This document shows positions 2,950 through 21,164 of a stretch of DNA of 64,000 bases, piece after piece. The position numbers were made by a program, and so were the translations under genes. Below the pieces are notes generated by a model, which made no database searches, was not told the origin of the DNA, and was given only the letters and a program-made list of their open reading frames with translations. The DNA lies in sequence record MT133560.1. The stretch is one strand, 5' to 3'. Numbering within the stretch: the first letter of the stretch is position 1; each line of letters opens with the position of its first letter.

Positions 2950-3312
2950 TTAAAACTTTTTAGTTTGATATAAGCTAACGAGGTGTTGAATCATGTCGTT
3001 ATTCGGTATGATTAAATAACTGGTGTAATCATTAGCTGAAGGATCCCTTAGAACTTTACCAAAATCATAAGGGCTAACTAAACCATTAACGCGCATTTGA
3101 ATCCACCACATATCAGGATTGACACGGCGTTCTGCCATGTATCCATAAAAGTTTCCTTCGAACTGGTAATACAGTTCAGGTGGAATCTGAATACGTGTGG
3201 ATCTGACATTACGTAAGATATTCAAATGAGTCTCAATAATTAATCTGAACCCTGGTTCATAATAAACAGATTCACCTGAATCTGGCTGATTAGCTAACAG
3301 TGTGAATGCCAT
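2950..3312 (-). CDS. Hypothetical protein (gp70-like)
   Basis: ORF; ATG at 3312 (MAFTLLANQ) with GGAA upstream preferred over TTG at 3324. Confidence 0.75.
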   Translation of the reverse strand: MAFTLLANQPDSGESVYYEPGFRLIIETHLNILRNVRSTRIQIPPELYYQFEGNFYGYMAERRVNPDMWWIQMRVNGLVSPYDFGKVLRDPSANDYTSYLIIPNNDMIQHLVSLYQTKKF

Positions 3313-15739: not shown

Positions 15740-17161
15740 ATGTCTAAAAAGAATCAACGATTTGGAAAGTTTCCTCAACTCAATCGTTTACCTGAAAAAC
15801 CCATTGTCAAAGACGAAGTTTTATCAGAAGCAACTGAAGATAAGCCAACTTCTGAAATTGGTCGAGGATTAACAAATATTGAATTAGTATCTCCTGAGGA
15901 AGTATATGCTACAGCAGATGATATTAATTCTTCAGTTAATACAGATAACGATACCTCAGAATTAGCTGAAGTTAATGTAAATGCACTGCGTACTGACTTC
16001 GATATTCCTGAAACATGGACAGATGAAAATGTCATTGAATGGTTTACCAATGATGGCATTGCTAAAGGTAAAACTGAACTCGGTAGCTTTGTATTTGACC
16101 CAACCCGTAAATATCGTCCTTATGATGAATGGTCAGATGATGAACTAATCGATGCTGCTAACCATCGTCTAACTGGTGTAGTTAATGATATTGCCGATAT
16201 TGCTGATGATATTTTAACTAAACGGGCTAAAGAGAATGAGACTACTGAGGAAGTAATTGTACCGGTAGTTAATGAAGATACTCTGAAACAAGATATTCGC
16301 AATACTGAAGACAGTATCAAGCTTGAAGAATTAGTCAAGCAACTGCGTATTCACACTAGTGATATTCCACTAGATTGGTCTACCCAAGAAGTGGTTGATT
16401 TTGTTAAACAAGGTATTACTCCACCAAAAACACTACGTGGTAGTTGGGTTAATAGTGTTATTCGTGATAATGCTCCACCTACCGATTGGACGACAGCAGA
16501 GCTTGAAGACTGGGCTGAAGGACTTATTAAAAATAGTAATTTGATAAAAGATTTTAAAATTGCTATTGAGTTACGCGATCGTTTATTCTTACCTACCACT
16601 AGTCAAGATATTGAAACTATTGTTGAACAATGGAAAGTATTCTCTGGTAAAGATGATATTAAACCAACCGGGGAAGTTAAAATCTTGAATAGTGAATCAA
16701 CATCTAATGAACCTGTACTTCGTAAAGGTATGACCAAAATGAACCAAGTATTTATCGAATCTCGTCTAGAGCAGTTTGCCACTGGTGCTAAACCTGGTGA
16801 CTATATCACTATCGAACGTGGTGGAGATGCACAAAAGAAACTAGATGATGTATTCAACTACGTAATGACAATCGAAGATATTGAAGGCTTTAAATCAGGC
16901 ATGGATATTATCTTTGATTTCGTTAAGAAAAATCGTAATACCCTATTTAGTGAATCTAACGCACTTCGCTTTGTTGCTACTCTACCTACTCAGAATAACC
17001 GTCAAGAAGCACACATTAATCTTCTTACTCTATTCTGCCTATTTACTAGTGATGTATCAGATGCGCTTTATCAAGTAGATATCAACTATCTTGCACGTTT
17101 CATCCCTGAAGGTAAACGGCAACTCGTTCTACACTTCTTCCGGCAGAAAGCTGGTATGTAA
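15740..17161 (+). CDS. Hypothetical protein with internal duplicated Trp-containing domain (gp81-like)
   Basis: 473 aa; DIPETWTDENVIEWF and DIPLDWSTQEVVDFV repeats. Confidence 0.8.
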   Translation: MSKKNQRFGKFPQLNRLPEKPIVKDEVLSEATEDKPTSEIGRGLTNIELVSPEEVYATADDINSSVNTDNDTSELAEVNVNALRTDFDIPETWTDENVIEWFTNDGIAKGKTELGSFVFDPTRKYRPYDEWSDDELIDAANHRLTGVVNDIADIADDILTKRAKENETTEEVIVPVVNEDTLKQDIRNTEDSIKLEELVKQLRIHTSDIPLDWSTQEVVDFVKQGITPPKTLRGSWVNSVIRDNAPPTDWTTAELEDWAEGLIKNSNLIKDFKIAIELRDRLFLPTTSQDIETIVEQWKVFSGKDDIKPTGEVKILNSESTSNEPVLRKGMTKMNQVFIESRLEQFATGAKPGDYITIERGGDAQKKLDDVFNYVMTIEDIEGFKSGMDIIFDFVKKNRNTLFSESNALRFVATLPTQNNRQEAHINLLTLFCLFTSDVSDALYQVDINYLARFIPEGKRQLVLHFFRQKAGM

Positions 17162-17162
17162 A

Positions 17163-17192
17163 CATATTGCCTCCCCTAGGGGAGGCTTTATG
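17163..17192. terminator. CATA...TATG-flanked hairpin
   Basis: CATATT-GCCTCCCC-TA-GGGGAGGC-TTTATG. Confidence 0.7.
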
Positions 17193-17262
17193 CTGATTAT
17201 TACTTTTACTAGGTACTAATATAGTACGTAGATAAATATCAATATGTGCTGAGGTTATAGCA

Positions 17263-19179
17263 ATGTCTAATGAACAACAGGTTACAAATAAGAAAAAGAT
17301 TAAGGGCATTGAAGCCAAACATATTACTTATTGTACTGATCAATTTGGTAAGTTTACAGATGCACATTTCGTTAAAGAACGAATTCATTTTGAAGATGGT
17401 ACAACTGCAAATAATTTAAGGATGTGGGAAAACTACCAGCGTCCTTTTTGGATTACCTCAAAAGGAATGCGTAACCATAAAGAAAAGAAAGATTACGAAT
17501 ATGAGCGTAACTTAGTTAAATATATGTCAACTCAAATTGACATGAAACGTAAGATTAGTAAAATCCTAGGTGACTATTCGGCTAGATCTCTTCGTCAACT
17601 AGCGCGTAGTCCTTACCTATATGGCAGTGATGTTAGTTCAACCTGTTATCTGAAGCATGATTATCAAGAACGTTATCCTGGTCTAATCTCTCTAAACACT
17701 GTTGCTGGTGGTGACATCGAAACCAACGTTTATGAAGCTGAGAACGATGGTCAGATTATCTGTATGTCAGTCACACATAAGAACAAAGCTTTCTTAGCCT
17801 ATTTAAAACGATGGGTTAGTGATATTGAAGATCCAGTGAAAGAGACATTAGAACAAGCACAAAAAGAAGAGGTGCTATCGCATCTAATTAAAGAACGTGG
17901 TCTAGATATTGAAGTAATGGTTGTTGAAACACCAGTAGATATTATTATTGAATGTTTTAAACGACTACATACCTGGAAACCAGATTTCTTCGCATTCTGG
18001 AATATTAGCTTCGACATTGGTAGAATCTTAAAAACATTAGAACATTATGGTGTTAATCCAGCTGATGTTTTTTCTGATCCATCGGTACCTAAGAATTATA
18101 GGTATTTCCATTTTAAGATTGACGAACCTATGACCACCACTGCATCTGGGGTCACCAAATCTAAAGGACCGGAGGATCAATGGCATTGGATTACAGCACC
18201 CTCTAGTTTTCAATGCATCGATTCTATGTCAACTTATCGTGTAACTCGATTAGCTAAAGGACGTGATCCTAACTATCGATTAGAGTCTATTCTTAGAAAA
18301 GAACTAAACATCGATAAATCTACGACCATTAAAAATGATAAGGACTTAGAAGATTTTATTGAAGGTTTTAATAAACAACTAGTTGACAGGCCAGGCGGAG
18401 TTATTACTAAATATATTAAAAATGTAGGTAGTAATGAATGGGTACCGGTGGATGATTTTATATTAAATAATAACTTTACCTATGGTGATTCTATTAGATA
18501 TGTAATGGAATTTGGTAAGTTAACCTTTAAAGAAACTGCACATCTTGGTGGTATCGACTGGCACCGTGAGATGCAGACTAAACATAAAATCAAATATGGT
18601 CTTTATAACATCATCGACTCCATTCGACTAGAACAACTTGATGAACAAGTAAATGACCTTGGTCGTTCTATAAGTCTATTCTCTAAAGCATCCGATTATA
18701 AGAACTTTAGCTCTAACCCAAAACGACTATGTGATGACATGCATTTCTGGTATCTAAATAGACCAGATCCATGTGTTATTGGTTCGAGTTCTGATCAGAT
18801 GGTACATGAGTTAGATCAGTATGTTATTGGTCATAACGACTGGATTGTTACATTGCCATCTTACATGGCAGGTCCAAATGGATTACAGTGCGTTAAAGAT
18901 TTACCAAATTATAAAACCTTAATCTTCTGCCATATCGCCGACCTTGACATCGTGTCGACATATCCTAACGTTAGTCAGATTCTAAATATTGCACGTGAAA
19001 CATGTGTAATGGAATTCTCGATGATGGAAGGAATTAGTGAACACCATCGCCGCGAAGTTGGCGTAAACTTAACAGGCGGTAGGGTTAATGCTATTGAAAT
19101 CACACAGAAGATCATGGGCGCTCCTAAAATGGATACCCTACTAGAGAAGTTTATTAATACCTATAAGAACCCAAAGTAA
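17263..19179 (+). CDS. Split family-B DNA polymerase subunit: 3'-5' exonuclease plus palm motif A (gp82-like)
   Basis: ExoI GDIETN, ExoII FWNISFDI, ExoIII YNIIDS, motif A DLDIVSTYPNVSQILNIARET; motifs B and C absent. Confidence 0.85.
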   Translation: MSNEQQVTNKKKIKGIEAKHITYCTDQFGKFTDAHFVKERIHFEDGTTANNLRMWENYQRPFWITSKGMRNHKEKKDYEYERNLVKYMSTQIDMKRKISKILGDYSARSLRQLARSPYLYGSDVSSTCYLKHDYQERYPGLISLNTVAGGDIETNVYEAENDGQIICMSVTHKNKAFLAYLKRWVSDIEDPVKETLEQAQKEEVLSHLIKERGLDIEVMVVETPVDIIIECFKRLHTWKPDFFAFWNISFDIGRILKTLEHYGVNPADVFSDPSVPKNYRYFHFKIDEPMTTTASGVTKSKGPEDQWHWITAPSSFQCIDSMSTYRVTRLAKGRDPNYRLESILRKELNIDKSTTIKNDKDLEDFIEGFNKQLVDRPGGVITKYIKNVGSNEWVPVDDFILNNNFTYGDSIRYVMEFGKLTFKETAHLGGIDWHREMQTKHKIKYGLYNIIDSIRLEQLDEQVNDLGRSISLFSKASDYKNFSSNPKRLCDDMHFWYLNRPDPCVIGSSSDQMVHELDQYVIGHNDWIVTLPSYMAGPNGLQCVKDLPNYKTLIFCHIADLDIVSTYPNVSQILNIARETCVMEFSMMEGISEHHRREVGVNLTGGRVNAIEITQKIMGAPKMDTLLEKFINTYKNPK

Positions 19180-19547
19180 TATATCAGTGGAAGCGCCGAG
19201 GAGGATATGAATGTTCATCTGTTGGTGACAAAAGATTCTCGGCTCTTTACGCAAGGCTTCCTGATGGTAGAACAATTGAGGAAGCTTGGCAGTTAGATTG
19301 TAAAGGATATCGCAAATACTCCAACCACTGGAAAGCTGGTAAAGGAAAACCACCACTAGACGGATATAATCCTAAATATGATGATTATAAAAATCTGTGG
19401 AAAGTATGGGCTGTATCTAATAAACATCTAATGGATGAATTACGTCAGAATGCAAAAGAACATGATAACTATCTTTCTGATGTTTTTGCTTCTACTGATA
19501 TTTCACAGGCACGTGCTTTAGCAGAACTACTCAATGAAGGATATTAA
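19176..19547 (+). CDS. Hidden 123-codon start-less ORF, NADAR (T4 gp30.3)-like; probable -1 frameshift extension of the polymerase subunit
   Basis: Hand translation VIYQWKRRGGYECSSVGDKRFSALYARLPDGRTIEEAWQLDCKGY...QARALAELLNEGY*; first in-frame ATG only at 19431; C_CCA_AAG at 19170-19176. Confidence 0.75.
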   Translation, partial: VIYQWKRRGGYECSSVGDKRFSALYARLPDGRTIEEAWQLDCKGYRKYSNHWKAGKGKPPLDGYNPKYDDYKNLWKVWAVSNKHLMDELRQNAKEHDNYLSDVFASTDISQARALAELLNEGY

Positions 19548-19613
19548 AAATGGAAGGTATTCCTAATTAAATATTATCAATTGATCATTACTGCTAATAT
19601 AAACTTCGACACA

Positions 19614-19646
19614 TCATAAAACCCTCCCATTACGGGAGGGTTTATT
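19614..19646. terminator. Bidirectional terminator hairpin
   Basis: CATAAA-ACCCTCCC-ATTAC-GGGAGGGT-TTATT between convergent genes. Confidence 0.8.
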
Positions 19647-19649
19647 TCG

Positions 19650-21164
19650 TTAACTAATTTGGTATTTTAAATTCTGATTACCGTTTAGAACATAAATCTT
19701 ACCATCGTTATTAAACGTATTGGCAAAACCTGCATCCACTAAACCAGTTTCTAAATTACCTAAATTTATCCATCGTGCTAATCGTGGTTCATAATACTTA
19801 ATTGGTGCATTATTTTGATTTTCACCAGCGATTACATAAAGTTCACCAGATGGGCGTATATTAATAGCTGCACCAAGAGGTATACCTGTAGTTATTGGTT
19901 TAGACCAATTATTGTTGGTTTGATTGTACGATATGATTCCAGTATTAACACCGGCACCAACCATACCACCAATAACACATACGCTATTATTATAAACACT
20001 CACTGAATAATCTTGGGTATATACCCCAGTATCATTAAATGCTGCACCACTGGTATATGTATCTGTAGTTGGATTGTACATTAATGTAAATCCACGATTA
20101 TTTGTTGCAGTTGTATCAGCTGCACCTAATATGTAGATTAACCCATTAAGACTAGTTCCACGTGCATACCGACAAGCTATCGTACCTGGTGATTTTATTT
20201 CCCATGTATTAGTTGCAGGATCATAACACTGCATACCTTTAGTGAGTACACCATCTGTGGCACTTTCACCACCATAGAAATATACTTTACCATTAAATGC
20301 AACAGCCGAGCATTGTTTAACTGCTATAGGTGTACCAGTTGGTTGTAATGTTGTTAACTTACCCGTGGCTAAATTCAATGTACGTAGAGCAGTATTAGCA
20401 TTATTCTTACCACCGTAATAATAGACTAAGTTACCTATTTGGGCACCTGCTGCCATTTCGTTATCAGTTTCAAAATCAGTAAGTTTAATAACATTATCTT
20501 TAACGAATGGATATGTACCACTAGCATAAACCACTGGACGCCAACCTTGGGTTGCAGCACCCGTTTCACTACTTGACGAGCTAGTTATATCAATCGCATA
20601 GTAGCCACGATAGAGCTGGTCATTAACTGGATCACTACCTGGGTCTCTTCCCCAGTTAGTAGTACCATCAGTGCTAATACCACCAGCGACCGCTTGGTTA
20701 ATACCTAAGTCATTATCTGTAAATTTATAAGGCCAGTTAGCACCATTTAAATTAGATACGTGAACATTATAAAGTAACCTTTGCCATTCTGATGTGGCAC
20801 CAGCCATTGTTAATAAACCAAATTTATAAATGTTCCCCATAAATCTAACTTCATAGTCACCATTACGGAGTCCGGCATTATTAAGCCGTGATTTTTGTAT
20901 TGATTTACGAGCTGGTTTCTTTGGTATGTAACAAGTAACATTTTTATTAGAGAACTTTAACCATGGTTGTCCATCATTGATTACTGTTCCAAATGTCATA
21001 TTAACTAATTTAGCTGCATCATCATAACCAAATAATTCTGAAGATGTTGTTTCACCATACAAACCTAATTCCCTTGTCCCAGCTATCAGTGTTTTAGGAC
21101 CTGGATAAGGATCGGAATATATAGGCGTATTTGTTAGTCCAGAAGACAACAATAACTCAAACAT
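19650..21164 (-). CDS. Virion (tail-fibre-like) protein with C-terminal Kelch beta-propeller (gp83-like)
   Basis: Repeats VYYYGG, VYFYGG..YDPATNTW, IYILG..YNPTTDTY, VCVIGG, LYVIAG; N-terminal PGPKTL..G..WLKF module typical of phiKZ virion paralogs. Confidence 0.75.
   Translation of the reverse strand: MFELLLSSGLTNTPIYSDPYPGPKTLIAGTRELGLYGETTSSELFGYDDAAKLVNMTFGTVINDGQPWLKFSNKNVTCYIPKKPARKSIQKSRLNNAGLRNGDYEVRFMGNIYKFGLLTMAGATSEWQRLLYNVHVSNLNGANWPYKFTDNDLGINQAVAGGISTDGTTNWGRDPGSDPVNDQLYRGYYAIDITSSSSSETGAATQGWRPVVYASGTYPFVKDNVIKLTDFETDNEMAAGAQIGNLVYYYGGKNNANTALRTLNLATGKLTTLQPTGTPIAVKQCSAVAFNGKVYFYGGESATDGVLTKGMQCYDPATNTWEIKSPGTIACRYARGTSLNGLIYILGAADTTATNNRGFTLMYNPTTDTYTSGAAFNDTGVYTQDYSVSVYNNSVCVIGGMVGAGVNTGIISYNQTNNNWSKPITTGIPLGAAINIRPSGELYVIAGENQNNAPIKYYEPRLARWINLGNLETGLVDAGFANTFNNDGKIYVLNGNQNLKYQIS

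What the first reader, a model, noticed from the sequence alone, without database searches (positions are those of the whole stretch)
19176..19547. Unannotated ORF with NADAR (T4 gp30.3/AdfN-like) signatures
Missed by the ORF track because it has no start codon. The translation YECSS..RFSALY..PDGRTIEEAWQLDCK..WKAGK..YKNLWKVWAVSNKHLMDEL..YL follows the order of NADAR motifs as I recall them for T4 gp30.3 (EIRS, LSNF, DG..LEGFLQGCK, AGR, Y...A.QN..F...L). Established: NADAR enzymes reverse DarT1 guanine ADP-ribosylation, and T4-like phages use them against DarTG1.
Basis: partly seen in the sequence, partly recalled or inferred. Interest (0 to 1): 0.72.

Follow-up and report, generated by a model that had tools for sequence, protein, structure and literature searches.

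The report
Frameshift-appended domain on phage DNA polymerase
A conserved 122-codon gene with no start codon lies directly after the DNA polymerase gene of this phiKZ-type giant phage; comparison with relatives indicates it is made when ribosomes slip back one base at the end of the polymerase gene, which would add an extra, probably NAD/ADP-ribose-related, enzyme domain to the replicative polymerase.

Summary
Frame 19167-19547 (+) is open for 127 codons and has no ATG/GTG/TTG before 19431. It is a full-length member of a widespread ~122-aa phage family (phrog_9995, E=2.8e-55; 855 representative hits). ATA at 19179 sits where relatives have their start codon.

The window is a phiKZ-like phage, 100% identical to phage fnug. 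The upstream gene is gp82, the N-terminal subunit of the split replicative DNA polymerase. The ORF lies in the -1 frame relative to gp82. The canonical slippery heptamer C_CCA_AAG (19170-19176) is in phase and immediately precedes the gp82 stop.

Nine start-less relatives all carry an in-phase C_CCA_AAG, G_GGA_AAG or A_AAA_AAG at the same junction. Two phiKZ-like contigs encode polymerase and the domain as one in-frame ORF. Within the phiKZ group dN/dS is 0.03.

Best reading: programmed -1 frameshifting makes a 761-aa gp82-X fusion.

NADAR homology is not demonstrated. Pfam and hhalign are negative, and Foldseek gives only TM 0.41 at E=7, whereas an AdfN control hits NADAR structures clearly. 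However, fusions and gene neighbourhoods (DUF4326, SLOG, NadV) put the domain in the NAD/ADP-ribose network where NADARs are found.

No experiment supports any of this yet.

The parts
17263..19179 (+). gp82 homologue: DNAP-N, the N-terminal subunit of the split B-family replicative DNA polymerase (638 aa). This is the zero frame. Stop TAA at 19177-19179.
   Evidence: phrog_3011 'DNA polymerase', E=1.3e-241. Annotated as PHIKZ082 DNA polymerase. The gp82+gp50 complex has a solved structure in bioRxiv 10.64898/2026.09.30.755723.
19170..19176 (+). C_CCA_AAG, a canonical X_XXY_YYZ -1 slippery heptamer. It is in phase with the gp82 frame (codons CCA-AAG = Pro637-Lys638) and is followed directly by the gp82 stop.
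   Evidence: It is one of only two in-phase positions available between the last -1-frame stop (19164-19166) and the gp82 stop. C_CCA_AAG, G_GGA_AAG and A_AAA_AAG are described as the highly shift-prone heptamers in E. coli (PMC5009743).
19176..19547 (+). -1 frame read after the proposed shift: GTA (Val), then the 122-codon X domain (ATA 19179 to TAT 19544), then stop TAA at 19545-19547. Predicted transframe product: gp82 residues 1-638 plus 123 residues = 761 aa.
19179..19181 (+). ATA codon at the position where relatives have the start codon of the domain gene. PhiPA3 has ATG here. 201phi2-1, RVTF4 and D6 have GTG and Psa21 has TTG at this position. PS119XW starts at a GTG one codon upstream.
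19278..19304 (+). Codons for the invariant E34 (19278), Q38 (19290) and K42 (19302) on the first helix of the domain. These are the candidate catalytic residues.
   Evidence: Invariant columns in the 109-sequence alignment A2. Helix 33-41 in the model.
19431..19547 (+). The only piece annotated in phiKZ (PHIKZ082.1, 38 aa). It is the C-terminal fragment of the domain, starting at an internal Met.
   Evidence: phrog_33573 is that fragment.
19619..19643 (+). Intrinsic-terminator-like hairpin that ends the gp82+X transcription unit. Its partner upstream of gp82 lies at 17169-17186.

Best explanation
The ORF is a functional gene for a compact catalytic-looking domain, here called X (the phrog_9995 family). 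In the phiKZ group X has lost its own start codon. I propose it is translated by programmed -1 ribosomal frameshifting at the end of the DNA polymerase gene.

Proposed mechanism (inferred): ribosomes translating gp82 (DNAP-N) reach C_CCA_AAG (19170-19176) with the TAA stop next. A fraction slips back one base, so that tRNA-Pro moves from CCA to CCC and tRNA-Lys from AAG to AAA. Those ribosomes continue with GTA-ATA-TAT-CAG-TGG and so on. The product would be a 761-aa protein: the full gp82 with X on its C-terminus. The remaining ribosomes terminate and make plain gp82.

Shown here by computation: the gene is real and under purifying selection. The heptamer is in phase and sits in the only place where a shift can work. 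The same arrangement recurs with three different shift-prone heptamers in start-less relatives. Natural in-frame polymerase-X fusions exist.

Inferred only: that frameshifting occurs, its efficiency, and the function of X. My best guess for function is a hydrolase of the NAD/ADP-ribose network, possibly a pared-down NADAR-like N-glycosidase. It would act on adducts in or near replicating phage DNA and would be carried to the fork, and into the phage nucleus, by the polymerase.
For: 1. Reality and selection. phrog_9995 E=2.8e-55 over the full length. dN/dS is 0.03 within the start-less phiKZ group and 0.03-0.13 against relatives. The junction 19141-19230 is 100% identical in 42 of 47 genomes and at least 96.7% in the rest.

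2. Geometry. X is in the -1 frame of gp82. The -1 frame opens at 19167. The heptamer at 19170 is in phase and abuts the stop.

3. Comparison across relatives. Nine lineages have a gp82-like gene upstream and no ATG/GTG/TTG at or near the family N-terminus. Every one has an in-phase X_XXA_AAG inside the permissible window:
- C_CCA_AAG in the phiKZ group, L015, L018 and Phabio;
- G_GGA_AAG in L017, where the polymerase tail changes from PK to GK;
- A_AAA_AAG in L022, the Noxifer group (L023, L056), L047 and L060/62.
The per-lineage chance is 6e-4 to 1.3e-2, with a product of about 1e-23 if the lineages are treated as independent. In the C_CCA_AAG lineages the codon before Pro encodes N, P, S, A, V or L but always ends in C.

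4. Other start mechanisms fail. The codon at the family's Met position in start-less lineages is ATA, ACA, ACT, GTA or GTT, so near-cognate initiation does not explain them. In the A_AAA_AAG lineages the polymerase stop lies 24-63 nt downstream of the heptamer and beyond X's conserved N-terminus in most of them, so reinitiation after termination does not explain them either.

5. Natural fusions. P0343 (698 aa, next to a PhiKZ-type capsid gene) is an in-frame DNAP-N+X fusion. P0260 (236 aa, next to gp85/gp86 homologues) is the polymerase C-terminal piece plus X in one ORF.

6. The three heptamers seen are exactly those named as highly shift-prone in E. coli (PMC5009743).

7. Transcription. gp82 and X lie between two terminators, with none between them.

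8. Function. The model has pLDDT 97. D17, E34, Q38, K42, K55 and D101 are invariant. X is fused to DUF4326 in about 20 of 148 representatives, in both orders. It is also fused to SLOG, RNase H, and SprT plus helicase. In 16 of 64 non-polymerase viral loci its neighbours are NadV/NAMPT, YAcAr-SLOG or DUF4326.
Against: - There is no experimental evidence. No paper in the searchable library mentions gp82.1 or frameshifting in this gene.
- The recent polymerase structure paper expressed only the annotated gp82 and obtained an active enzyme with gp50. X is therefore not needed for core activity.
- I found no conserved downstream RNA structure and no upstream Shine-Dalgarno-like stimulator. The phiKZ hairpin has z=-2.0 and is not shared with relatives. 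Efficiency could be low.
- Several relatives (PhiPA3, L092, PS119XW, 201phi2-1, Viktualia) have both the heptamer and their own ATG or GTG. Psa21, RVTF4 and D6 have X in the +1 frame with GTG or TTG and no heptamer. X can therefore work as a free protein, and part of the heptamer's conservation could be shared descent.
- The lineages are not fully independent, so the combined probability is overstated.
- A_AAA_AAG sites in metagenome contigs could in principle be homopolymer assembly errors hiding in-frame fusions. However, the isolate Noxifer has the same site.
- The functional assignment rests on context and a weak fold resemblance only.
Confidence: 0.65

Rival explanations
1. X is made as a free 122-aa protein. 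Initiation would be at the near-cognate ATA (19179), or by termination-reinitiation of ribosomes finishing gp82 at the overlapping TAA (TAATA). This would be a leaky version of the TAATG or GTGA coupling seen in PhiPA3 and PS119XW.
For: Relatives have their start codon at or one codon before this position, overlapping or next to the polymerase stop. One G-to-A change separates the phiKZ junction from either the PhiPA3 or the PS119XW arrangement. X works as a free protein in many phages.
Against: ATA is a very weak initiator. There is no Shine-Dalgarno sequence upstream; the GAGGAGGA at 19198-19205 is downstream. Other start-less lineages have ACA, ACT, GTA or GTT at that codon. Others have the polymerase stop well downstream of X's N-terminus. 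Neither arrangement can be explained by this mechanism, whereas all have a slippery heptamer. Low-level initiation may still coexist with frameshifting.
Confidence: 0.15
2. The ORF is a recently dead gene. It lost its start codon and is no longer expressed, or only the annotated 38-aa tail is made.
For: There is no start codon, and genome annotators skipped it in all 47 genomes.
Against: The ratio of 8 synonymous to 1 non-synonymous change between phiKZ-group members gives dN/dS 0.03. Five of those synonymous changes lie upstream of the internal ATG. The frame is intact in 47 genomes. Start-less versions persist in at least nine diverged lineages.
Confidence: 0.03
3. One reading: X is a true NADAR homologue, like T4 gp30.3/AdfN. 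It would remove ADP-ribose from guanine in DNA and protect the phage from DarTG1.
For: - NADAR proteins have the highest TM scores among the non-significant fold matches (8bau 0.41; viral NADARs 0.41-0.59).
- The secondary-structure order is colinear with AdfN.
- The motif order RFSA / DGRT / E-x3-Q-x3-K resembles NADAR's FSNF / DG.T / E-x3-Q-x2-K.
- The fusion partners and neighbours are those typical of viral NADAR and Macro domains (PMC9503650).
- phiKZ already carries a nuclear macrodomain, AdfM, against DarT2 (PMC13309987). A guanine-specific partner would make sense.
Against: - There is no sequence or profile support.
- Foldseek gives probability 0.04, against 0.97-1.00 for the AdfN control.
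- X lacks the roughly 40-residue middle segment. In NADAR structures that segment holds the residues that bind the adenine and pyrophosphate of ADP-ribose (PMC11543638).
- The Glu-Lys spacing differs by one residue.
- Nothing here links X specifically to DarT1.
Confidence: 0.2
4. X is a non-enzymatic accessory module of the replisome, for example a DNA- or protein-binding domain, or a handle for import into the phage nucleus. It would have no link to NAD/ADP-ribose chemistry.
For: X is tightly linked to the polymerase gene in Pseudomonas nucleus-forming phages. It is fused to RNase H and to a SprT-helicase protein elsewhere. The model is basic and rich in aromatic residues.
Against: The invariant D17, E34, Q38, K42, K55 and D101 look like an active site. 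X occurs in many phages with unrelated polymerases (N4-like and others). Its commonest partners are DUF4326, SLOG and NadV, not replisome parts.
Confidence: 0.15

Closest known systems
E. coli dnaX (tau/gamma) -1 programmed frameshift at A_AAA_AAG
   Same: A canonical X_XXA_AAG heptamer inside a replicative DNA polymerase subunit gene gives two products in a fixed ratio. The A_AAA_AAG relatives found here use the identical heptamer (PMC5009743).
   Different: In dnaX the shift truncates the protein, and an upstream Shine-Dalgarno-like element and a downstream hairpin stimulate it. Here the shift would extend the protein by a whole extra domain, the stop codon abuts the heptamer, and no conserved stimulator was found.
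Phage lambda G/GT tail-chaperone frameshift (G_GGA_AAG) and E. coli copA/CopA(Z) (C_CCA_AAG)
   Same: The heptamers are the same. As with lambda GT, the shift near the end of the upstream gene would produce a C-terminally extended fusion alongside the short product.
   Different: The gene class is different: a replicative polymerase plus an enzyme-like domain, rather than a tail chaperone or a metal chaperone. That copA uses C_CCA_AAG is from my own knowledge. The library only confirmed that copA frameshifts (PMC9548414) and that the heptamer is shift-prone.
NADAR superfamily (YbiA, DarG1, T4 gp30.3/AdfN)
   Same: X is also a small alpha+beta domain with an invariant Glu and Lys on the first core helix. 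The order of secondary-structure elements is similar. The genomic company (SLOG, DUF4326, NadV) is the same.
   Different: There is no significant sequence, profile or Foldseek similarity. X is about 40 residues shorter and lacks the ADP-ribose-binding middle segment. The Glu-Lys spacing is 8 rather than 7.
phrog_9995 (PhiPA3 gp084, 201phi2-1 gp143, Delftia phage RG-2014 protein A0A097PAI7)
   Same: X is a full-length member at 87%, 68% and about 51% identity respectively. The predicted fold is the same (TM 0.90, E=2.6e-13 to the RG-2014 protein).
   Different: Those proteins have their own ATG or GTG and are annotated as free-standing hypothetical proteins. None has a known function.
phiKZ AdfM (gp104), the nuclear macrodomain that reverses DarT2 ADP-ribosylation of DNA
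   Same: Same phage. X would be the same kind of task if it acts on DNA adducts, and it would need to be in the same compartment (PMC13309987).
   Different: The fold is unrelated. AdfM is a separate gene with its own import. X would ride on the polymerase.

Membership tests
phrog_9995 (uncharacterised ~122-aa phage protein family) | Full-length profile match | tested here: met
   E=2.8e-55; residues 6-126 of the 126-aa translation match profile positions 2-123 of 124. 87% identical to PhiPA3 gp084.
Canonical -1 programmed ribosomal frameshift site | X_XXY_YYZ heptamer in phase with the upstream (zero) frame | tested here: met
   C_CCA_AAG at 19170-19176; CCA and AAG are gp82 codons 637 and 638.
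Canonical -1 programmed ribosomal frameshift site | Downstream ORF in the -1 frame, open from the shift site, with no initiation codon of its own | tested here: met
   The -1 frame is open from 19167. The first ATG/GTG/TTG is at 19431, 84 codons into the conserved domain.
Canonical -1 programmed ribosomal frameshift site | Shift site conserved, or replaced by an equivalent heptamer, in relatives independently of the encoded residues | tested here: met
   Three heptamer types occur in nine start-less lineages. The codon before Pro varies in amino acid but keeps its third-position C.
Canonical -1 programmed ribosomal frameshift site | Stimulatory element (downstream hairpin or pseudoknot, or upstream Shine-Dalgarno-like sequence) | tested here: inconclusive
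   Only a modest hairpin 14 nt downstream in the window (z=-2.0). Nothing is shared across ten lineages. [quoted passage not shown]
Canonical -1 programmed ribosomal frameshift site | Transframe protein detected | not testable with these tools
   No proteomic or ribosome-profiling data are at hand. No paper mentions it.
NADAR superfamily (Pfam PF08719; AdfN/gp30.3 PF08010) | Significant match to the family's sequence models or profiles | tested here: not met
   No hit at E<=1 for X or for 19 relatives. The PDB sequence profile search found no NADAR. hhalign probability is 0.14-0.27%.
NADAR superfamily (Pfam PF08719; AdfN/gp30.3 PF08010) | YbiA-like fold: helical core flanked by two small beta sheets | tested here: inconclusive
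   8bau gives the best TM among PDB matches, but only 0.41 at E=7.3 and probability 0.04. 2b3w and 8bat are not listed. Viral NADARs give TM 0.41-0.59 at E>1. The AdfN control gives E=1.4e-4 to 0.12 and TM 0.55-0.67. Element order is colinear apart from the middle insert.
NADAR superfamily (Pfam PF08719; AdfN/gp30.3 PF08010) | Catalytic Glu and Lys seven residues apart on the first core helix (E88/K95 in E. coli C7 NADAR; E36/K43 in AdfN) | tested here: inconclusive
   E34, Q38 and K42 are invariant on helix 33-41, but the Glu-Lys spacing is eight residues. Reference residues are from PMC11543638 and PMC11257639.
NADAR superfamily (Pfam PF08719; AdfN/gp30.3 PF08010) | Middle helical segment carrying the residues that bind the adenine and pyrophosphate of ADP-ribose | tested here: not met
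   X has about 25 mostly non-helical residues (43-66, with the invariant GKGKPP) where AdfN has helices 47-66 and hairpin 76-85. The binding residues are listed in PMC11543638.
NADAR superfamily (Pfam PF08719; AdfN/gp30.3 PF08010) | ADP-ribosyl (N-glycosidic) hydrolase activity | not testable with these tools
   This needs biochemistry.
Viral NAD/ADP-ribose network (contextual class, Iyer et al. 2021 and 2022) | Recurrent fusion or neighbourhood with SLOG, DUF4326, Macro/NADAR or NAD-salvage genes | tested here: met
   DUF4326 is fused to X in about 20 of 148 representatives, in both orders. YAcAr/YpsA SLOG fusions occur. NadV/NAMPT, YAcAr, DUF4326 or SLOG-like neighbours occur in 16 of 64 loci. 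The criteria are taken from PMC9503650 and PMC7824862.

The most novel reading that the evidence does not exclude
Nucleus-forming Pseudomonas phages use a conserved -1 frameshift at the end of the polymerase gene to put a previously unseen enzyme on a set fraction of their replicative polymerases. The enzyme would be a stripped-down NADAR-like hydrolase of the NAD/ADP-ribose network. The polymerase would then carry its own eraser of DNA base adducts, such as DarT-type ADP-ribosylation, to the replication fork. The small enzyme would also enter the phage nucleus by riding on an imported protein. X would be a fourth, overlooked component of the phiKZ replisome.
Probability: 0.25. Interest if true: 0.88.

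Novelty: new variant of a known kind. Interest (0 to 1): 0.78.

Why it matters
phiKZ is the model nucleus-forming phage. Its DNA polymerase was reconstituted and solved only in late 2026 from the annotated genes gp82, gp50 and gp155. If a share of gp82 carries a 123-residue extension, the replisome studied so far is incomplete.

It would also be a clear case of recoding that attaches an accessory enzyme to a phage replicative polymerase, conserved through three interchangeable slippery heptamers.

The domain is common: 855 representative proteins, including giant multi-domain proteins. It has no known function, no solved relative and no Pfam family. Its company (DUF4326, SLOG, NadV) ties it to NAD/ADP-ribose conflicts between phages and bacteria. 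A function for it would annotate hundreds of phage and mobile-element proteins, and it may reveal a new counter-defence.

On the practical side, 47 deposited phiKZ-like genomes, several of them therapy candidates, lack this gene in their annotation. Several related genera annotate it truncated.

Tried and rejected
- Pfam, NCBIfam and PADLOC scans of X found nothing relevant.
- A PDB sequence-profile search gave only chance-level ribosomal protein hits.
- Foldseek against the PDB gave no significant match.
- hhalign against T2 gp30.3, a YbiA/NADAR alignment, an AdfN-family alignment and a merged one, also with a wider X alignment built from 142 representative domains, stayed below 0.3% probability. 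One forced global alignment does line up FSAL with FSNF, DGRT with DGKT and IEEAWQ with SEHYFQ, but its statistics are chance-level, so I give it no weight.
- A search for a conserved downstream frameshift stimulator in ten lineages found nothing.
- An Rfam scan of 17000-20000 found only sub-threshold, terminator-like matches.
- Recoding of TAG as a sense codon to explain L071/72 is not supported by the ORF pattern of that locus.
- Pseudogene and 38-aa-peptide readings are rejected on dN/dS.
- Sequencing error as the cause of the frame change in the phiKZ group is rejected. 47 independently sequenced genomes share the junction, and it has no homopolymer longer than three bases.
- Transcriptional slippage is unlikely for C_CCA_AAG, which has only three A's.
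I did not resend that sequence. I used an AdfN-family protein returned by the homology search (P0391) as the control instead.
- Four giant proteins carrying X (1,537-2,690 aa) gave no Pfam hits, so they were uninformative.
Full report
**What is there.** The window is a phiKZ-like Pseudomonas phage. The region 18600-19700 is 100% identical to phage fnug and 95.7-99.9% identical to 46 other Phikzvirus genomes. The other two + frames are full of stops. No ATG, GTG or TTG occurs in the open frame before 19431. The mechanical ORF list therefore shows only a 38-aa ORF, and phiKZ annotates only that tail as PHIKZ082.1.

**It is a real gene.** The translation matches phrog_9995, a 124-position family of unknown function, end to end at E=2.8e-55. 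There are 229 homologues of about 122 aa, led by PhiPA3 gp084 (87% identity) and 201phi2-1 gp143 (68%). A profile search of 1.84 billion representatives finds 855 proteins, 595 of them below 1e-10. In the alignment the family N-terminus 'MY.WKR' falls exactly on ATA-TAT-CAG-TGG-AAG-CGC at 19179. The gene is complete, at 122 codons from 19179 to 19544, except that ATA stands where the start codon should be. Within the start-less phiKZ group it is under strong purifying selection. Window versus PA7 shows 8 synonymous and 1 non-synonymous difference (dN/dS 0.03), and five of the synonymous changes lie upstream of the internal ATG. The protein is 97.5-100% identical in all 47 genomes.

**Context.** The upstream gene, 17263-19179, is the homologue of phiKZ gp82 (phrog_3011, E=1.3e-241). 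[quoted passage not shown] That paper cloned only the annotated gp82 and mentions neither the downstream ORF nor any recoding. gp82 and the ORF lie between two terminator-like hairpins, at 17169-17186 and 19619-19643, with none between them.

**The junction.** The ORF is in the -1 frame relative to gp82. The last two sense codons of gp82, CCA-AAG, together with the preceding C, form C_CCA_AAG (19170-19176). This is a textbook X_XXY_YYZ heptamer in the correct phase, followed at once by the TAA stop. The -1 frame is closed by a TAA at 19164-19166, so only two in-phase positions could support a productive shift, and the heptamer occupies one of them. After a tandem -1 slip the ribosome would read GTA, ATA, TAT, CAG, TGG and onward. 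The product would be gp82(1-638) plus Val plus the 122-residue domain, 761 aa in all.

**Comparative test: isolate genomes.** I collected the same junction from annotated relatives.
- PhiPA3 has TAATG, an ATG overlapping the stop.
- PS119XW has GTGA, a GTG overlapping the stop.
- 201phi2-1 and Viktualia have a GTG 11-14 nt further on, with the -1 frame open in between.
- All of these keep the in-phase C_CCA_AAG.
- Psa21, RVTF4 and D6 have the gene in the +1 frame with TTG or GTG starts and no heptamer. Their annotations start it too late.
- Phabio, like phiKZ, has no start codon (GTA-GTA-TAT) and keeps C_CCA_AAG.

**Comparative test: viral contigs.** I then fetched 80 viral contigs encoding the domain. 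Sixteen of them have a gp82-like gene directly upstream. Counting the window, nine distinct lineages lack any ATG/GTG/TTG at or near the family N-terminus. Every one has an in-phase X_XXA_AAG between the point where the -1 frame opens and the polymerase stop:
- C_CCA_AAG in the phiKZ group, L015, L018 and Phabio;
- G_GGA_AAG in L017, where the polymerase tail changes from ..PK to ..GK;
- A_AAA_AAG in L022, the Noxifer group (L023, L056), L047 and L060/62.

A review of recoding names exactly these three as the highly shift-prone -1 heptamers in E. coli (PMC5009743). The chance of such a heptamer in each permissible window is 6e-4 to 1.3e-2. The product over nine lineages is about 1e-23. That figure overstates the case, because the lineages share ancestry, but the switch between three heptamer types cannot be inheritance. 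In the C_CCA_AAG lineages the codon before Pro encodes Asn, Pro, Ser, Ala, Val or Leu and always ends in C, so the nucleotide is conserved rather than the amino acid.

**Why the alternatives fail.** Two facts exclude other routes for most lineages. First, the codon at the Met position is ATA, ACA, ACT, GTA or GTT, which are mostly not near-cognate starts. Second, in the A_AAA_AAG lineages the polymerase stop lies 24-63 nt beyond the heptamer and past the conserved N-terminus of the domain in most of them, so reinitiation after termination would lose it.

**Natural fusions.** The representative search also returned P0343 (698 aa), from a contig with a PhiKZ-type capsid gene next door. It is a gp82 homologue and the domain in one uninterrupted ORF. 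It also returned P0260 (236 aa), next to gp85/gp86 homologues. It is the last roughly 90 residues of the polymerase subunit plus the domain in one ORF. These Rosetta-stone fusions show that a covalent polymerase-domain protein is viable and selected in this phage group.

**Weak points of the frameshift case.**
- I found no conserved downstream hairpin or pseudoknot and no upstream Shine-Dalgarno-like element. The phiKZ hairpin has z=-2.0 and is not shared. [quoted passage not shown]
- Relatives with their own start codon show that the domain also works as a free protein.
- The core polymerase is active without it.
- Nothing has been seen experimentally, and the searchable literature is silent.

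I put the frameshift fusion at about 0.75 on its own. Combined with an enzymatic role for the domain, I put the joint explanation at 0.65.

**What the domain is: the negative evidence.** With a 109-sequence alignment, AlphaFold2 gives a very confident model (pLDDT 97, pTM 0.90). It has a short N-terminal strand, a helix at 33-41, a largely non-helical stretch at 43-66 containing the invariant GKGKPP, two long helices (67-80 and 82-94), a strand and a C-terminal helix. Invariant residues are G16, D17, S21, A25, E34, Q38, K42, K55, G56, Y70, W74, W77, L88, D101, Q110, A111, A113 and L114. That pattern suggests an active site.

- There is no Pfam match to PF08719 or to PF08010, the gp30.3/AdfN family.
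- The PDB sequence profile search finds no NADAR.
- hhalign probabilities stay below 0.3%, even with broader alignments.
- Foldseek against the PDB has no significant hit. The Phytophthora NADAR 8bau appears at rank 25 (E=7.3, probability 0.04), although it has the highest TM score of the list (0.41).
- As a control, a model of an AdfN-family protein (pLDDT 93) finds YbiA 2b3w, 8bau and 8bat as its top three hits (E=1.4e-4, 0.019 and 0.12; TM 0.67, 0.55 and 0.60).

A known divergent NADAR is therefore recognised clearly by this test, and the domain is not.

**What the domain is: the positive hints.**
- In the viral structure library, after four true family members, the non-significant list is crowded with NADAR proteins (TM 0.41-0.59) and DUF4326 proteins.
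- The order of secondary-structure elements matches AdfN once its middle segment (helices 47-66 and hairpin 76-85) is removed.
- E34, Q38 and K42 sit where NADARs have their catalytic Glu, Gln and Lys. AdfN has E36 and K43; E. coli C7 NADAR has E88 and K95. In X the lysine is one residue further along.
- The missing middle segment is the part that binds the adenine and pyrophosphate of ADP-ribose in the solved complex. If the domain is a NADAR derivative, its substrate recognition must differ.

**Context is the strongest functional evidence.**
- Among the 148 best representatives, about 20 carry DUF4326 fused to the domain, in both orders.
- Others carry YAcAr or YpsA SLOG domains, DUF488, RNase H, or a SprT-like domain with a PIF1/RecD-type helicase.
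- 38 of the 148 are proteins longer than 1,500 aa.
- In the 64 viral loci without a gp82-like neighbour, recurrent same-strand neighbours are NadV/NAMPT (6 loci), YAcAr SLOG (5), DUF4326 (4), a SLOG/DprA-like protein (4) and a dCTP deaminase-like protein (4). Sixteen loci have at least one neighbour from the NAD/ADP-ribose network, often directly adjacent.
- Iyer and colleagues describe just this company (SLOG, DUF4326, NAD salvage) for viral NADAR and Macro domains. They note that DUF4326 bridges these systems with DNA replication and restriction-modification components (PMC9503650, PMC7824862).
- One stand-alone homologue sits among a Sak recombinase, a RecD2-like helicase, a nuclease, ParB and KfrA in an integrase-bearing element.

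I conclude that the domain probably belongs functionally to the NAD/ADP-ribose conflict network (about 0.5). It may be a stripped-down NADAR relative (about 0.3). A specific anti-DarT1 role is possible but untested (about 0.15-0.2). phiKZ already has a nuclear macrodomain, AdfM (gp104), against DarT2 (PMC13309987).

**How it most likely works.**
- Shown by computation: the gene, its selection, the in-phase heptamer and its equivalents, and the natural fusions.
- Inferred: a fraction of ribosomes shift at C_CCA_AAG and produce gp82-X. The extension hangs from the C-terminus of DNAP-N, which lies in the palm insertion where the polymerase is split.
- Speculative: tethering brings a small hydrolase to the fork and into the phage nucleus, where it removes a base or ribosyl adduct that would block replication.

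**Novelty.** Frameshifting at these heptamers is well known from dnaX, lambda G/GT and copA. A frameshift that appends an accessory enzyme domain to a phage replicative polymerase, kept through three interchangeable heptamers, is not something I could find described. The domain family itself has no Pfam entry, no solved relative and no known function. I rate it a new variant of a known kind, with interest 0.78.

Noticed in passing
L004 (PhiPA3 HQ630627) 1911-2216: The PhiPA3 gp82 homologue (gene 085) is interrupted by a group I intron (Rfam RF00028, 71.7 bits, E=1e-16) directly after the catalytic Asp of motif A (..ADLD). The deposited CDS stops there, and the last roughly 70 codons of the polymerase subunit are unannotated.
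   Followed up: partly
L071 and L072 (IMG/VR contigs) about 2230-2670 and 2995-3000: A structured insertion of about 400 nt sits at the same polymerase site as the PhiPA3 intron. It contains an AGATATAGTC-like core but stays below the Rfam threshold. In these contigs the X domain follows the polymerase in the same frame, separated only by a TAG (GAT TAG CTA ACC..), and has no start codon. That suggests stop-codon readthrough or a suppressor tRNA. The ORF pattern of the locus gives no sign of general TAG recoding.
   Followed up: partly
L007 (Psa21), L011 (RVTF4), L012 (D6), L006 (PS119XW), L008 (Phabio), L009 (Noxifer), L010 (Viktualia): The deposited annotations start the X gene 20-25 codons too late, at an internal ATG, or split it into fragments. 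The true N-terminus overlaps or abuts the polymerase gene. It uses GTG or TTG in Psa21, RVTF4, D6 and PS119XW, and has no start codon in Phabio and Noxifer.
   Followed up: yes
window 19207-19296 (+): A 29-codon ATG ORF in the +1 frame inside the X gene is annotated as a CDS in phage KEN49 (CDS0328). It overlaps a conserved, selected frame and is most likely an annotation artefact. The GAGGAGGA just upstream of it (19198-19205) encodes the conserved Arg-Gly-Gly of X.
   Followed up: partly
P0254, P0255, P0269, P0274, P0276 and about 30 other representatives: The X domain is embedded in very large proteins of 1,500-6,100 aa. The four scanned (1,537-2,690 aa) had no Pfam hit at all. They may be polyvalent proteins of phages or conjugative elements, but their origin was not examined.
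   Followed up: no
P0295 (603 aa) and P0298 (1110 aa): X is fused N-terminally to an RNase H domain in P0295, and to a SprT-like domain plus a PIF1/RecD-type helicase in P0298. The RNase H fusion is notable because the phiKZ polymerase works with an RNase H-clamp protein (gp155).
   Followed up: no
L054 (Achromobacter phage Axy12) 1490-2241, and the other N4-like phages: In N4-like Achromobacter and Delftia phages the X gene lies 1-7 kb from the left genome end, which is the early region. In Axy12 it directly follows a YAcAr-type SLOG gene.
   Followed up: partly
window 19650-21164 (-): The convergent neighbour is the gp83 homologue (504 aa), annotated as a virion or head structural protein in phiKZ. 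It ends at the shared terminator hairpin at 19619-19643.
   Followed up: no
BFVD hits F8SK47 (PhiPA3 protein 174) and A0A1Y0T067 (Phabio): Two other small chimallivirus proteins of unknown function give weak fold matches to X (TM 0.45-0.50, E>1). They might be further members of the same structural class in these genomes.
   Followed up: no
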